Part shown: one piece after another, positions 12,402-16,445 of the stretch
Layout: the number at the start of each line of letters is the position of its first letter
Position numbering within the stretch: position 1 is the stretch's first letter
The notes under the pieces: model-generated
The model's database searches: none
What the model was told of the DNA's origin: nothing
What the model saw: only the letters and a program-made list of their open reading frames with translations
DNA from: Monocercomonoides exilis PA203
Taxonomy: Eukaryota; Protista; Preaxostyla
Direction: 5' to 3'
Length of the DNA stretch: 64,000 nt
NCBI GenBank assembly: GCA_001643675.2
Contig: LSRY02000019.1
Location: 620,001-684,000, forward strand
Program-made: the position numbers and the translations under genes

Positions 12402-14807
12402 TCACAATTTCATTAACGTTTTTGCCACAATAATTGCAGCAGCTCTAACTCTGCTGTCCCATTTCGAATTTCGGATTGCATCGATGCATTCTGGAATTCC
12501 CATGCTTTCAGATAATACCTTCACCAGATGCTTGAGGTGCATGCGTTGGTCTTCGAGTTCTGCTTCAGAGAGAACCGGGATGCTAAACTTTTCCTTTAAA
12601 ATTTGTGATATTTCTTCTTCATCAAGAGTAATAATTGTTTGCTCCGACTTTTCCTTTTCCTTATCCTTTTCCTTCTCCAATTCTTTCTCTTTCTCCTTTT
12701 CTTTCTCTTTTTCTTCATCCAATACTTCTTCTTTTTTTATTTCCTTTTCATTTTTTGAGCTTTTCTCTTCCTCTTTTTCCATTTCGCAACATTTCCTGCG
12801 ATACTCTTCAACACATACACGCTTCAGAAGTTGCCCCAGACCCAGCAGCGCACAGCGAAAACAAACAGAATCCGACGTAAACAGAGTCTGCAACTGCGGG
12901 TTAGTGGATGCTAAGTCTGTTGAACCTGCTGAGTTTGCTGAGTTTGTTGAACTAAAGTCTTCTTCTTCACTGCTGTCTTCATCAACTTCTTCGACCGCTT
13001 GCATTTTTTTTGCGATGTGCTTTCTTTCGTCTTCCAACCGGCTGATGGCGCTTTCTGCATCGTCTGGAATGGTCACTTCAAGAGACAGAAAACGCTCTAT
13101 GCTTTTGAACAGGTTCTCGACAAACAAGCAATGCACAGCTGGCGTCTGAGAGAATGGATGATGCTTATCTTTGCTTCTTCCATCATCATCATCAGAAGAA
13201 GAAGAACAAGGTGAACTGCTTGACGAATGAGCATCGTCGGAAGCAGCATCATTAGACGGAGTTTCTGAAATGGAAGAAGCAGCCACCAAGGAAGACAATC
13301 GAAGCATGTTGGAAGAGCTCGATGATTTCGAGGACGAAGAAGAAAGGATGGCTCCGAAGGAGGCAAACTCAGAAAGAGAAAGAAGTATTTGAAAAGCCGA
13401 AAGGCGCTGCCGCTGAAACAGAAGGGGAGAAAAAACGAAAGAGTCTTGAGGCAAGTCAGGTTTTTGAATGCATGTTGATGCAGACGCTGAAATTGGCTTA
13501 GCCGATGAACTGGATGGAACAGGAAACGAAGAAGATTCTGAAGGCGGATGAAGGAAAATAACAACACAGTCATGAAAGTCGGATGAGGTCACATCCTTCT
13601 TCTTTGAAGAAGTTACGTTTATTGTTGAGAACAGAATCACTTTGTGCAGAAGCGAAGGATAAGTGAAAATGATGTCTGCATACGAATTTGGGGATGAAAG
13701 CAAGATGTGGATAGTCTCAAGCACTTCTTGCGAGAGCTGAAGCAAAAGCGTTTCGCTTGGTGAGGTGTGAGATATGGAGGCGAAACACGCACCATCCTTG
13801 ATGAAAGATGGTTCGTACGACAAAAATGGAAGAAGGGAGTCAAGAAATGGATACAAATTCATCGTCAATATCAGCTCATTCTTCATGCTTCTGTTCAATA
13901 CTAATTGTTGCACTAATTCAACCGAGGTTATCAGAAGTTTCATCATTTCATGGGTTAAATAAACATCTGAAAGCCTAATAACTGGGAGATTGGACGAATT
14001 TGAAGAAGAAAAACTGGATGAACAAAATTTTTTATCATTGGAAGTGCTAATCGAAGTTGGAATAATTTTATTTTCGAATATTTTTTGCATTGCATTTACA
14101 AATACTCGCGGAATATTCAGCCTTTGAAGAGTTTCACGAGAAGCTAGTTTCCAAAAATATTTGATAGCAACAACATTAAAACTGCAACAAAAAGTGAAGT
14201 ACATACAAAAATTCTCTCCAAGAACAGCGAAGCAATTGAACAATTGGGCGATTTCCACAATATCAAAATCTATTTTCAATTCACATTCCAAAGAATCAAT
14301 AAGAAATTGTGTAACCATCTCGCTCAATTTTTGTGGGAATGTCTTGAATTTGAAAAGATAGCAAAGGCATTTACAAGCAAGTAACTTAATTTGTTTGGAT
14401 GTTTTTTCATCTATGACAAAGTTAGAAAGAATTTTTTCTCCATTTGTTCTGCGAAAGCCATCACAAAGAATATTTTTGCGCCAATGACCAGCTAATACAG
14501 CTCCTTTATAAAGAGAAATGTACAGAAAATGCATTGAATTCAATGCAATTTCAGCATCTTCTGATTGTAACAATATCAGCACAGGATTCAAAAATTTACT
14601 GGTTGCCAAATCAAAAAGATCCTCTTTGGAAGCCTTTTGTACTTGCTGTTCAAGTTCTGAAAGTTTGACAAGCAAATCTTCTTTTGTTAAGTTTGATAAA
14701 TGTTCAATAGAATCTTTACAAAATTGCAAATGAATGATTATAGTTTATAAATTTTAATGTATAAATGCAAAACTAATTATAGAAATTGCATTTCCTCGTT
14801 CTTCCAT
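12402..14807 (-). CDS. Hypothetical helical/ARM-like protein with Ser-rich and Glu/Lys-rich tracts
   Basis: 775-aa ORF 14729-12402; probable short first exon (MEERGNAISII) at ~14807 joined by a GT..AG intron; possible 63-nt in-frame intron 14206-14144. Confidence 0.6.
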
Positions 14808-14989
14808 TCAAAGAAAAAATTTGAATTAAAAATGTTCTCAAAAATAATGTTATGGATTTTTCGAGATGATTTTGACATTTATGTTATTGCATCATTTTCG
14901 TTTTCATTCGCTTCTGTTTGAAATGAGATTGTAATTTTGTTGATGAAGAAAAAATTTGATCCTTAAAGCCATTACTGAATAATCTGACA

Positions 14990-15380
14990 ACTATGATAAA
15001 GCCTTTATGAAAATTTCACATTGGAAAGCGTGTGAATCACCTGGAGGATAGGGGATAAATGTAACCCTAACCTAGTTTGAATCATTTCATATTTAATGAA
15101 AAAGGTTCTTCTGTGGGCCTTCTTTTTGAGTGTCAATGATACTTAGAAAAGCAGCCGAGTACCCCAGGCCTGATTCCTTTTGCATTTTGCTTTTTAAGTT
15201 AGTGCGAGTTGAGTCTAATCCTGGGTAAGGGGTTGTTCCTGTGGAACGGTCAAACGATCTTCCAGAAAGGCCCTAACGTCCTCATCTGGCAATGGCTAGA
15301 CACAACTGTGCGGGGTTTGTCCTCGGCAGATTTATGTGCAGGAAAGATTCATCGCTTTCCACAAAGTTAGAATATCTGAT
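14990..15380 (+). ncRNA. Candidate telomerase RNA (template TAACCCTAACC) with box C/D-like termini
   Basis: Intergenic GC-enriched island with no ORF; template at 15062-15072; GGGGATAAA (15051-59) pairs with TTTGTCCTC (15316-24); TGGAAAGCG/TGAATC (15022-38) pairs with GATTCA/CGCTTTCCA (15346-61); several internal hairpins; CTGA at 15376-79. Confidence 0.7.
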
Positions 15381-15691
15381 AAAAGATTTGAATTATGTAT
15401 AATTTTTATTTCGTTCTATTTTAAAAAAAATGAAAAGTATCGAGTGAAAAATTATTATTGGTGAAAAATGAGCTTCCAACTCATTAAATTTATTTCCTTA
15501 CGCAAAGAATCATAAAAATATGACTTTCGTAATGATGCAAATTAACGCCTTGAAAAAAAATTTCTGAATGTAATTTACAAAAAGAAAAATAAAGCCCATC
15601 TGATGATTTTAAAAAAACTTAAAAATAATGGAAGTTCAAGATTCCAATAGATGTGAATTATTTGAAGAGAAAGAAGAGAATTGTTGATAAT

Positions 15692-16445
15692 TTAGAAGTG
15701 TTGAGATAGCCACTGAATTCCCTCTCTGAAGCCCCGACCTCTGGTGATAGTGCACATGAAAATTTCCAACGGTCTTGCTCCATGTGCAACTGCTGAACCT
15801 TTTCCGGTTGTCGAAAGAGATAACCCTAATGCGCTTCGAAGTTCTGCTTCCGATGCAGCTCCTGGAAGATCAATCTTATTTCCCAACACCAAAATTGGAA
15901 TAGTCTTTATACGTTCATCGGTTAAAATCTTTTCCAACTCTGCTCGAGCCTCGGGGAATCGATCACGATCATATGAATCAACAAGAAAGATGATAGCATT
16001 TGCAGTTGTAATGTATTCTCCCCAAAGAGGTCGAGCTGAAAATCAAAAAGTTTTTGCGTTTTTGAATAATACTATTATGTTAAATTGTTGAAATAAAAAT
16101 ACGAACCTGCAACATGGCCACCCATATCGTATGCGTGAATATTAAGCTTTTCATAAGTAAACTCTTCTTGAACTGAAATATGCATTGTTCAGTCCATATC
16201 AACACCAAATGCAATCAGGAGAAAATATGAAATAGCAAAATGAAAATCTAAATTCTAATGATTTTGTACAGCAATGGCAAACTTGGCATCTGAGTGGGAT
16301 CTTGAGGAACAATTTTTCCAAATTTCAAACAATGAAGAAGTGTTGTTTTTCCAGCGCCATCCAGTCCTACGAACAAAAGATTACCACTTTTGTTTATTAA
16401 GCCCCATGATTTTAACAGATTTTTGATCCACTTCCAAATAAACAT
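15692..16445 (-). CDS. SAR1: Sar1 small GTPase (COPII), 3 exons
   Basis: MFIWKW N-terminus, GLDGAGKTT P-loop, DMGGHVAARPLW switch II, LGNKID, TTGKG, RPLEIFMC..GF.EG.QWLSQ. Confidence 0.93.

What the first reader, a model, noticed from the sequence alone, without database searches (positions are those of the whole stretch)
14990..15380. Candidate telomerase RNA gene (TTAGGG template) in an intergenic gap
Seen in sequence: the gap between SAR1 and the 12.4-14.8 kb gene holds an ORF-free, GC-enriched island. It contains TAACCCTAACC (15062-72), about 1.8 copies of the complement of TTAGGG. Two nt upstream, GGGGATAAA (15051-59) can pair with TTTGTCCTC (15316-24), the position of a template-boundary element. 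The domain is closed by TGGAAAGCG/CGCTTTCCA (15022-30/15353-61), TGAATC/GATTCA and CCTG/CAGG. Internal helices are TTTCAT/ATGAAA, GGGCCTT/AAGGCCC (15115-21/15267-73), a hairpin at 15122-51, TACCCCAGG/CCTGGGTA (15160-68/15220-27), TGGAA/TTCCA and TCTGGC/GCTAGA. AGTTGAGTCTA (15207-17) can cross-pair with TAGACACAACT (15297-307) at 10 of 11 positions, a possible pseudoknot. Established knowledge: telomerase RNAs have a ~1.5-2-repeat single-stranded template, a 5' boundary helix and a pseudoknot, and are too divergent for BLAST or Rfam to find. Inference: this is the TR of an oxymonad/metamonad, a group where I know of no validated TR (novelty not verified).
Basis: partly seen in the sequence, partly recalled or inferred. 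Interest (0 to 1): 0.92.

Follow-up and report, generated by a model that had tools for sequence, protein, structure and literature searches.

The report
Telomerase RNA gene of Monocercomonoides
This intergenic island is very probably the telomerase RNA gene of the oxymonad Monocercomonoides exilis, apparently the first for any metamonad, because the bases just 3' of its TTAGGG template are found copied into this genome's own telomeres.

Summary
Window 15022/27-15362 (+) is a single-copy, expressed, strongly structured RNA of about 336-340 nt (fold z -6.6). It has no Rfam match. SRP, U3, RNase P and RNase MRP RNAs lie at other loci. The genome is M. exilis, with TTAGGG telomeres and a TERT gene.

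- **Decisive evidence.** Other first readers of this scan had noted a recurrent telomere variant, TTCAAACTAGG, on other DNA of this genome. I verified it. It is the exact reverse complement of 15071-81, the bases directly 3' of the template UAACCCUAACC (15062-72).
- **Junctions.** Many unique-sequence/telomere junctions begin with variable-length suffixes of ATTCAAACTAGG. This is the mark of telomerase priming on this RNA.
- **Gene signals.** The locus carries the snRNA-type promoter shared by M. exilis U2, U3, U5, U6, MRP, P and SRP genes. It has the U2/U3/U5-type spacing and the same downstream ATCTGWWW box, and no T-run, which suggests Pol II. These signals predict ends at 15022-27 and 15362, and one RNA-seq contig spans 15028-15362.
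- **Not shown.** The pseudoknot and template-boundary helix remain unproven, no relatives were found so covariation could not be tested, and TERT binding is untested.

Confidence is about 0.88.

The parts
14957..14975 (+). snRNA-type proximal promoter element: TGATC (14957-61), 7 nt, then CCATTAC (14969-75)
   Evidence: The same [T]GATC-N2-8-CC(A/C)T(A/T/G)(A/T)T element lies upstream of M. exilis U6, MRP, RNase P, SRP x2, U2 x2, U3 x2 and U5. The composite element plus TATA occurs once in 128 kb of window background, and that one case is this site.
14992..15001 (+). TATA-like box TATGATAAAG (GATAAAG starts at 14995)
   Evidence: GATAAAG starts 26 nt after the CCAT core, the spacing found in all five U2/U3/U5 genes. 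The Pol III-type genes have 31-33 nt. The box lies 27-32 nt before position 15022-15027.
15022..15362 (+). Telomerase RNA body, about 336-341 nt (5' end 15022-15028, 3' end about 15362)
   Evidence: Run X2 gives an RNA contig at 15028-15362. No run covers 14670-15020. Fold z is -6.64 on the + strand. The locus is single-copy. The ends predicted from the promoter and the 3' box agree with the contig ends.
15062..15072 (+). Template UAACCCUAACC: templating part 15062-67, alignment part 15068-72
   Evidence: It is complementary to 1.8 TTAGGG repeats. G15061 cannot continue the repeat. Two one-round scraps elsewhere (C33, C41) end exactly at ...GGGTTA.
15073..15083 (+). 3' template flank UAGUUUGAAUC, used as a second alignment and start site
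   Evidence: The reverse complement of 15071-81 is TTCAAACTAGG, the dominant complex variant inside the telomere arrays. It is also the first telomeric bases at many chromosome-end junctions, in variable register.
15022..15043 (+). 5' strands of the three-part closing stem (15022/25-30, 15032-38, 15040-43). They pair with 15339-42, 15346-52 and 15353-58/61.
   Evidence: Present in the MFE and in every constrained fold. This is thermodynamic support only.
15339..15361 (+). 3' strands of the closing stem
15044..15049 (+). GAGGAU, paired with GUCCUC at 15278-83 in the MFE.
   Evidence: Which helix, if either, sets the boundary is undecided.
15079..15108 (+). Hairpin directly 3' of the template (GAAUC/GGUUC and UUUCAU/AUGAAA). 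Its base must open when the flank is copied.
15115..15273 (+). Large junction domain closed by GGGCCUU/AAGGCCC. It holds a U-rich/A-rich hairpin (15123-49), a long hairpin (15150-15237) and a short hairpin (15242-64).
   Evidence: It is the place to look for the pseudoknot/triple helix and the TERT-binding stem. That role is inferred, not shown.
15285..15338 (+). Two 3' hairpins (15285-15300 and 15301-15338)
15372..15382 (+). 3' box-like element ATATCTGATAA. Its ATCTGATA core starts 12 nt after 15362.
   Evidence: [AT]TCTGWWW lies 12, 12, 20, 20 and 13 nt after the ends of U2a, U2b, U3a, U3b and U5. It is absent after U6, MRP, P and SRP, which end in T runs. ATATCTG[AT][AT]A occurs 4 times in 128 kb of background.
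15692..16387 (-). Context: the SAR1 gene. Exons are 15692-16035, 16107-16172 and 16283 onward. It has TTTATT/TTATTT (AAUAAA/AAAUAA on its own strand) at 15405-11.
   Evidence: Spliced RNA contigs. The large exon is 100% identical to M. exilis Sar1. The poly(A) signal type comes from PMC8767320.

Best explanation
This is the telomerase RNA (TR) gene of Monocercomonoides exilis. It is an independent snRNA-type gene on the + strand that yields an RNA of about 336-341 nt (15022/27-15362).

Inferred mechanism: TERT copies UAACCC (15062-67) after the DNA end ...GGTTA pairs with UAACC (15068-72), adding GGGTTA per round and stopping before G15061.

The RNA stays accessible for about 10 more bases 3' of the template. 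A ...GGTT end that pairs with AAUC (15080-83), or a non-telomeric broken end that pairs anywhere in 15073-83, is extended through UAGUUUG before it reaches the template. This writes (A)TTCAAACTAGG ahead of TTAGGG.

Shown here: the RNA exists, it is structured, it has promoter and 3' signals, and its flank sequence is present in the telomeres. Inferred: TERT binding, the exact ends, Pol II transcription, and the boundary and pseudoknot elements.
For: 1. A template of 11 nt complementary to TTAGGG lies at 15062-72. The genome has (TTAGGG)n at contig ends: 14472 forward and 9872 reverse matches against 2 and 5 for the control (PMC6759080, PMC8767320). A TERT RNA-binding domain gene is present (82.5 and 79.5 bits).

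2. TTCAAACTAGG is the reverse complement of 15071-81. It is the dominant complex variant among about 3000 telomere units examined, with at least 16 copies plus near-variants.

3. CCTAACCTAGTTTGAAD has 16 genomic hits against 0 for the control. They are this locus, three sites inside telomere arrays, one interstitial 21-nt scrap, ten hits (eight distinct sequences) at junctions of unique sequence with telomere, and one (C91) whose context I did not resolve.

4. Of 8 junctions not chosen by the variant, 3 carry different suffixes of it: CAAACTAGG, AAACTAGG and CTAGG. Variable register indicates template copying.

5. Fold z is -6.64 on the + strand only. The locus is single-copy.

6. RNA contigs cover 15028-15362 as a separate 335-nt contig in run X2. 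Coverage is zero at 14670-15020. SAR1 introns are spliced out of the contigs, so the signal is RNA and not DNA.

7. The promoter element, the TATA spacing of 26 nt and the 3' box at +12 match U2, U3 and U5 of the same genome.

8. No Rfam family matches. SRP (88.8 bits), U3 (103 bits), RNase P and MRP candidates are at other loci.

9. The other internal loci that carry the template-plus-flank string, C33 and C22, are unstructured (z -0.9 and -0.2), AT-rich and lack the promoter.
Against: - No homologue was found, so there is no covariation support for any helix.
- The pseudoknot and boundary helix are not established, and the MFE partly pairs the template.
- In 3 of 4 runs the RNA contig is continuous with the SAR1 transcript, and depths are similar (62 against 60 in X2). 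Contigs carry no strand information.
- The TATA-like box is imperfect (TATGATAAAG).
- The test for read-through of the 5' boundary was uninformative.
- There are no binding or activity data.
- The telomere arrays come from a nanopore assembly, so homopolymer-type variants such as TTAGG and AAA/AAAA are unreliable.
Confidence: 0.88

Rival explanations
1. The island is part of a long (about 665 nt) 3'UTR of the minus-strand SAR1 mRNA, perhaps a structured regulatory element. The telomere-like string would then be incidental.
For: In runs X1, X3 and X4 one contig runs from SAR1 into the island. In X2 the two contigs have similar depth, 62.4 against 59.5. The island lies downstream of the SAR1 stop codon on the SAR1 strand.
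Against: - Structure is specific to the + strand (z -6.6 against -2.2).
- The X2 contigs break at 15354/15362, exactly where the 3' box predicts the RNA end.
- GC is 0.44-0.46, against 26% for M. exilis 3'UTRs, whose mean length is 312 nt (PMC8767320).
- AAUAAA/AAAUAA on the SAR1 strand lies at 15405-11, which fits an end near 15380. No such signal lies 20-30 nt before 15028-15068.
- A + strand snRNA promoter sits at the right distance.
- This reading does not explain the match between the flank and the telomere variant.
Confidence: 0.03
2. It is a snRNA-like non-coding RNA with some other function that happens to carry, or acquired by insertion, a 21-nt piece of telomere-junction sequence. 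The true telomerase RNA would lie elsewhere.
For: Such 21-nt scraps do exist at non-telomeric sites: C33:1052677 and C22:23840. The bare 12-mer GTAACCCTAACC occurs at several unrelated loci. No TERT binding is shown.
Against: - The true TR must contain CCUAGUUUGAA next to a template. Apart from telomeres and junctions, all genomic sites with that string followed by A, G or T were listed. The context of one hit (C91) was not resolved.
- Only this locus is structured, expressed and promoter-bearing.
- The string lies antisense to the telomere G strand, in the largely unpaired stretch just inside the closing stem, as a template should.
- Where a telomere would have AACC, the locus continues AAUC, and many junctions carry the A that U15082 would encode.
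Confidence: 0.06
3. It is a scar of an old chromosome break healed by telomerase, lying in otherwise non-functional intergenic DNA.
For: Scars of the same 21 nt exist elsewhere.
Against: The known scars lie in AT-rich, unstructured DNA. This site lies inside a GC island of about 340 nt with z -6.6, RNA coverage and promoter signals.
Confidence: 0.02

Closest known systems
Plant and ciliate telomerase RNAs (Arabidopsis AtTR, Tetrahymena TER; PMC8287931)
   Same: Small size (150-350 nt). The template lies near the 5' end. The whole RNA is closed by a multi-part terminal stem (P1a-c or stem I). The gene is driven by a snRNA-type upstream element plus a TATA box.
   Different: Those RNAs are Pol III transcripts that end in a T run. 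This gene has the U2/U3/U5-type element-to-TATA spacing, a 3' box and no T run until 41 nt downstream. There is no sequence or Rfam similarity. A pseudoknot has not been shown here.
Fungal telomerase RNAs (S. cerevisiae TLC1, S. pombe TER1), which are Pol II snRNA-like transcripts (from established knowledge)
   Same: Predicted Pol II snRNA-like biogenesis. As in budding yeasts, the telomere arrays carry variant repeats that record how the template is used.
   Different: The fungal RNAs are 1-2 kb, have an Sm site and bind Est1 and Ku on separate arms. This RNA is about 340 nt, and I found no convincing Sm site.
Vertebrate TR (H/ACA class, Rfam RF00024) and trypanosome TR (Pol II; PMC9841428 abstract)
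   Same: An 11-nt template for TTAGGG, as in human TR, and a helix-closed template core.
   Different: There is no H/ACA two-hairpin 3' domain, because the 3' end pairs with the 5' end. There is no Rfam hit.
De novo telomere addition (chromosome healing) in ciliates, Plasmodium and yeast (from established knowledge)
   Same: Unique sequence is joined directly to telomere repeats. The first added bases depend on where the broken end pairs with the RNA.
   Different: Here the preferred start lies outside the canonical template, 1-10 nt to its 3' side. This gives a recognisable non-telomeric starter at many natural chromosome ends.

Membership tests
Telomerase RNA (functional class) | Template complementary to at least 1.5 telomere repeats of the same organism | tested here: met
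   UAACCCUAACC at 15062-72. Telomeres are TTAGGG (PMC6759080).
Telomerase RNA (functional class) | The template region is actually copied into telomeric DNA | tested here: met
   Indirect but specific. The non-telomeric flank 15073-81/82 appears as TTCAAACTAGG in the arrays and, in variable register, at junctions. No mutagenesis was done.
Telomerase RNA (functional class) | The organism has TERT | tested here: met
   PF12009 at C36:2215302-2215691, 82.5 and 79.5 bits.
Telomerase RNA (functional class) | Expressed as a discrete stable RNA | tested here: inconclusive
   RNA contigs cover it, and one contig matches 15028-15362. Contigs give no strand, and three runs join it to SAR1.
Telomerase RNA (functional class) | Core-enclosing helix | tested here: met
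   A three-part closing stem, 15022/25-43 with 15339-58/61, appears in all folds. Support is thermodynamic only.
Telomerase RNA (functional class) | Template boundary element 5' of the template | tested here: inconclusive
   There are two candidate helices: 15044-49/15278-83 in the MFE, and 15051-59/15316-24, which costs 8 kcal/mol. Products ending at GGGTTA in two scraps fit a boundary at U15062. Read-through variants were uninformative.
Telomerase RNA (functional class) | Pseudoknot with triple helix 3' of the template | tested here: inconclusive
U-rich and A-rich strands exist at 15123-52 and 15175-98. No pseudoknot tool and no covariation were available.
Telomerase RNA (functional class) | Binds TERT and supports activity | not testable with these tools
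   Needs immunoprecipitation or reconstitution.
Telomerase RNA (functional class) | Conserved, with covarying helices, in related species | not testable with these tools
   The nearest SAR1 is only 58% identical. Metagenome scans gave 0 hits and 44 chance-like hits.
Rfam telomerase RNA families (vertebrate, ciliate, Saccharomyces, Ascomycota) | Match to a family covariance model | tested here: not met
   No telomerase family matched at E up to 10 over 14500-16000, and nothing in the window reached a gathering score.
Pol II snRNA-type gene of M. exilis (class defined here) | GATC..CCAT element 26 nt before the TATA box, and an [AT]TCTGWWW box 12-20 nt after the 3' end | tested here: met
   The spacing is 26 nt to GATAAAG (23 nt to TATGATAAA). 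The box is at +12 after 15362. The class rests on five genes (U2 x2, U3 x2, U5), and polymerase use is inferred.
SRP, RNase P, RNase MRP and U3 RNAs | Match to the family model, with no other locus filling the role | tested here: not met
   No hit here. SRP is at C1 and C7 (88.8 bits), U3 at C6 and C68 (103 bits), RNase P candidate at C26 (25.5 bits, full length) and MRP candidate at C11 (31.3 bits, full length).

The most novel reading that the evidence does not exclude
M. exilis telomerase uses an extended template with two registers. About 10 bases 3' of the canonical template (15073-83) serve as the preferred landing site for non-telomeric or mis-aligned DNA ends. As a result many natural chromosome ends start with a fixed starter, (A)TTCAAACTAGG, and the arrays carry it as an internal variant. 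This would point to frequent chromosome breakage and healing in a genome with 40-50 small chromosomes. If the RNA is also a Pol II snRNA-type transcript, metamonads would join opisthokonts and trypanosomes. That would bear on whether Pol II or Pol III biogenesis of telomerase RNA is ancestral in eukaryotes.
Probability: 0.5. Interest if true: 0.88.

Novelty: new member of a known kind. Interest (0 to 1): 0.82.

Why it matters
I found no telomerase RNA described for any metamonad.
- A 2024 review says the Giardia TER is still unknown (PMC10999387).
- The 2021 and 2025 surveys of TR evolution do not mention metamonads (PMC8287931, PMC12133305).
- No paper links Monocercomonoides with telomerase RNA.

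Current views set Pol II telomerase RNAs (Opisthokonta, Trypanosomida) against Pol III type-3 RNAs (Diaphoretickes) (PMC9841428). A metamonad TR with a readable promoter gives a new, deep data point for that question.

The locus also gives a concrete RNA for reconstituting oxymonad telomerase. It provides a seed and a promoter rule for finding TRs in other Preaxostyla, parabasalids and diplomonads. It also explains the odd repeat and junction sequences at M. exilis chromosome ends.

Tried and rejected
- **Rfam.** The region at E up to 10 and the whole window at gathering score gave nothing relevant. The only hits were chance-level, including snoR25 at 15527-86 (23 bits, E 1).
- **Other known RNAs.** SRP, RNase P, MRP and U3 identity is rejected, because these RNAs are at other loci.
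- **Paralogues.** There are none; the locus is single-copy.
- **Synteny in relatives via SAR1.** The nearest homologues are only 58% (a 513-nt contig) and 55% (Streblomastix, a 1271-nt contig) identical, so this route is unusable. SAR1 was searched with its largest exon alone, by reference. The spliced, joined protein was not built.
- **Metagenome scans.** The 21-mer of template plus flank gave 0 hits. The promoter-plus-template pattern gave 44 hits with no flank similarity, about what chance predicts on my rough estimate.
- **Read-through of the 5' boundary (GGGTTAC...).** There were 35 hits against 11 for the control, but the next base inside arrays was a 9, t 6, g 6. This is uninformative. 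Only one array, on C32, reads GGGTTAC-ATTCAAACTAGG.
- **Rival loci.** C33:1052677 and C22:23840 show no structure, no GC island and no promoter.
Both are possible but not favoured by energy.
- **Neighbour gene 12402-14729 (-).** No Pfam family matched.
- Read laying was given 3501 letters.

Full report
**What is there.** TAACCCTAACC sits at 15062-72 inside an island of about 345 nt. Its GC is 0.38-0.46, against 0.22-0.30 in the flanks, and it holds no ORF of 60 aa or more. As RNA, the + strand 15010-15375 folds to -130.8 kcal/mol with z -6.64, and none of 100 dinucleotide shuffles folds as well. The - strand gives z -2.2.

**Organism and background.**
- The window is G000:C13:620001-684000 of an 82.3-Mb assembly in 101 contigs.
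- The large exon of the downstream gene is 100% identical to Sar1 of Monocercomonoides exilis.
- The assembly figures match the published nanopore assembly, which reports 10 chromosomes with two telomeres and 65 contigs with one (PMC8767320).
- (TTAGGG)4 occurs 14472 times forward and 9872 times reverse, against 2 and 5 for the control. The arrays reach contig ends. This agrees with PMC6759080.
- A TERT RNA-binding domain is encoded on C36 (82.5 bits; 79.5 bits).
- The genome therefore needs a telomerase RNA with a CCCUAA-type template.

**Not another known RNA.** Rfam gives nothing over the region at E up to 10, and nothing in the window reaches a gathering score. The other large structured RNAs are elsewhere in the genome:

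| RNA | Location | Score |
|---|---|---|
| SRP | C1 and C7 | 88.8 bits |
| U3 | C6 and C68 | 103 bits |
| RNase P candidate, full length | C26 | 25.5 bits |
| RNase MRP candidate, full length | C11 | 31.3 bits |

The locus is single-copy.

**The decisive evidence: the RNA's template flank is written into the telomeres.**
- Earlier first-stage notes on other pieces of this genome reported a recurrent telomere variant, TTCAAACTAGG. I checked this myself.
- On the right end of C1 the variant occurs at least 7 times inside the array, and the junction of unique sequence with telomere reads ...TTTATC-CAAACTAGG-(TTAGGG)3.
- Among about 3000 canonical units in hand it is the commonest variant apart from the TTAGG unit and single extra-G variants, with at least 16 copies plus TTCAAAACTAGG and TTCAAGCTAGG.
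- The reverse complement of window 15062-81 is TTCAAACTAGG followed by TTAGGGTTA. So the 9 bases directly 3' of the template (UAGUUUGAA), read together with the template, encode exactly this variant in the right phase.
- The pattern CCTAACCTAGTTTGAAD has 16 hits in the genome and none for the control. They are this locus, three sites inside arrays, one interstitial 21-nt scrap (C33), ten hits (eight distinct sequences) at junctions, and one on C91 whose context I did not resolve. At the junctions, unique subtelomeric sequence is followed by (A/T)TTCAAACTAGG and then the array.
- Among 8 junctions that were not selected through the variant, 3 begin with different suffixes of the same string: CAAACTAGG, AAACTAGG and CTAGG.
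- Variable register is what copying of an RNA from different priming points produces. A fixed subtelomeric element would not give it.
- By my own estimate, a random template-bearing locus would match the 7-nt non-telomeric core in the right place with probability about 6e-5.
- Where a telomere C strand would read AACC, the locus continues AAUC (15080-83). A ...GGTT end can pair there with three Watson-Crick pairs and one wobble. Seven of the ten listed junction hits carry the A that U15082 would encode.
- Two one-round scraps, on C33 and C41, stop exactly at ...GGGTTA. This fits a 5' template boundary at U15062.

**Rival loci.** The only other internal sites with template plus flank are C33:1052677 and C22:23840. 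They lie in AT-rich DNA, fold no better than shuffles (z -0.92 and -0.20) and lack the promoter element. They look like products of telomerase, not genes.

**An independent gene with snRNA-type signals.** The upstream regions of M. exilis U6, MRP, RNase P, SRP (two genes), U2 (two), U3 (two) and U5 share [T]GATC, 2-8 nt, CC(A/C)T(A/T/G)(A/T)T, and then a TATA box.

| Gene class | Core-to-TATA spacing | 3' signal |
|---|---|---|
| U6, MRP, RNase P, SRP x2 | 31, 31, 33, 31, 31 nt | T run |
| U2 x2, U3 x2, U5 | 26 nt in all five | [AT]TCTGWWW box 12-20 nt after the RNA end |
| This locus | 26 nt to GATAAAG (23 nt to TATGATAAA) | ATCTGATA 12 nt after 15362; no T run for 41 nt |

At this locus TGATC is at 14957-61, CCATTAC at 14969-75 and TATGATAAAG at 14992-15001. 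In 128 kb of window background the composite promoter pattern occurs once, at this site, and ATATCTG[AT][AT]A occurs 4 times. These signals predict an RNA from 15022-27 to about 15362 and suggest Pol II. The polymerase assignment is an inference.

**RNA evidence.**
- Four random-primed metatranscriptome runs from one study hold the region.
- Their contigs skip the SAR1 introns, so they derive from RNA.
- They give no cover at 14670-15020 and start at 15028, 15045, 15045 and 15068.
- In run X2 a separate 335-nt contig spans 15028-15362, and the SAR1 contig starts at 15354.
- In the other three runs the two are joined.
- Contigs carry no strand, so this is consistent with a discrete RNA but does not prove one.

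**Arguments against the rival reading (a 665-nt SAR1 3'UTR).**
- Structure is specific to the + strand.
- The GC content is wrong, since M. exilis 3'UTRs average 26% GC and 312 nt (PMC8767320).
- The SAR1-strand poly(A) signal at 15405-11 fits an mRNA end near 15380.
- No poly(A) signal lies upstream of 15028-68.
- The contig break coincides with the predicted RNA 3' end.

**Architecture (thermodynamic only).**
- A three-part closing stem (15022/25-43 with 15339-58/61) encloses a junction.
- The junction holds the template region, a hairpin at 15079-15108, a large domain at 15115-15273, and two 3' hairpins.
- The pseudoknot, the boundary element and the TERT-binding stem are not established.

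**Comparison and novelty.**
- The closed-circle layout and the snRNA-type promoter recall plant and ciliate TRs.
- The predicted biogenesis resembles the Pol II class (PMC9841428, PMC8287931).
- I found no published metamonad TR (PMC10999387; PMC12133305).
- No relatives could be retrieved.

**Verdict.** This is the telomerase RNA of M. exilis, with confidence about 0.88. It is a new member of a known functional class and does not belong to any described TR sequence family.

Noticed in passing
G000 chromosome ends: L029 (C21), L033 (C39), L035 (C45), L036 (C47), L037 (C52), L038 (C53), L040 (C62), L001/L026 (C1), L044 (C9), L067 (C54): Many natural chromosome ends join unique sequence directly to (A/T)TTCAAACTAGG or a shorter suffix of it, and then to TTAGGG repeats. 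This suggests the ends arose by de novo telomere addition. Several junctions also show loose microhomology to the RNA further 3' (for example ...GAAATAATTC against the encoded GAAATGATTC).
   Followed up: partly
Telomere arrays in L025-L042: The 5-nt unit TTAGG makes up about 5% of units (173 isolated cases per about 3000). It could arise when a ...TTA end pairs with UAG at 15073-75, or it could be nanopore G-run under-calling. The assembly alone cannot separate the two.
   Followed up: no
L011, L012, L013/14, L016/17, L021, L022/23, L073 (upstream 100 nt and downstream 40 nt of each RNA gene): M. exilis small-RNA genes share a GATC..CCAT upstream element plus a TATA box. The spacing is 31-33 nt in the genes that end in T runs (U6, MRP, P, SRP) and exactly 26 nt in U2, U3 and U5, which also have a downstream [AT]TCTGWWW box. 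This is a usable rule for finding ncRNA genes in this genome.
   Followed up: partly
L011 (G000:C26:370664-371073) and L012 (G000:C11:710531-710826): Full-length RNase P and RNase MRP RNA candidates score below Rfam's gathering cut-offs (25.5 bits against 28, and 31.3 against 50). They carry the snRNA-type promoter and P4-type 3' motifs, so they are probably genuine.
   Followed up: partly
L031 (G000:C33:1052677, minus strand) and L034 (G000:C41:818298): Short non-terminal scraps equal one pass of the RNA from U15082 to U15062: (A/T)TTCAAACTAGGTTAGGGTTA, followed by unrelated sequence. They are likely footprints of single-round telomerase action at breaks. The C33 site may be the 21-letter rival locus of note s1-466238.
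   Followed up: partly
L046 (C10:1731746), L055 (C22:23840); L057, L063, L064: Two repeat families abut GGTTAGGGTTAC: one continues GGAGTGCGGTACAAC... and the other GTTTTTTTTGATTAAATTTTTGATC.... They may be mobile elements that carry or target telomere-like ends.
   Followed up: no
window 15527-15586 (+): A weak C/D-box snoRNA-like hit (snoR25, 23.4 bits, E 1) with AAUGAUGC and CUGA motifs lies between the telomerase RNA gene and SAR1. It is at chance level.
   Followed up: no
window 12402-14729 (-): The upstream neighbour is expressed at low depth and has a 63-nt intron at 14144-14206. Its 579-aa C-terminal part has no Pfam family.
   Followed up: partly
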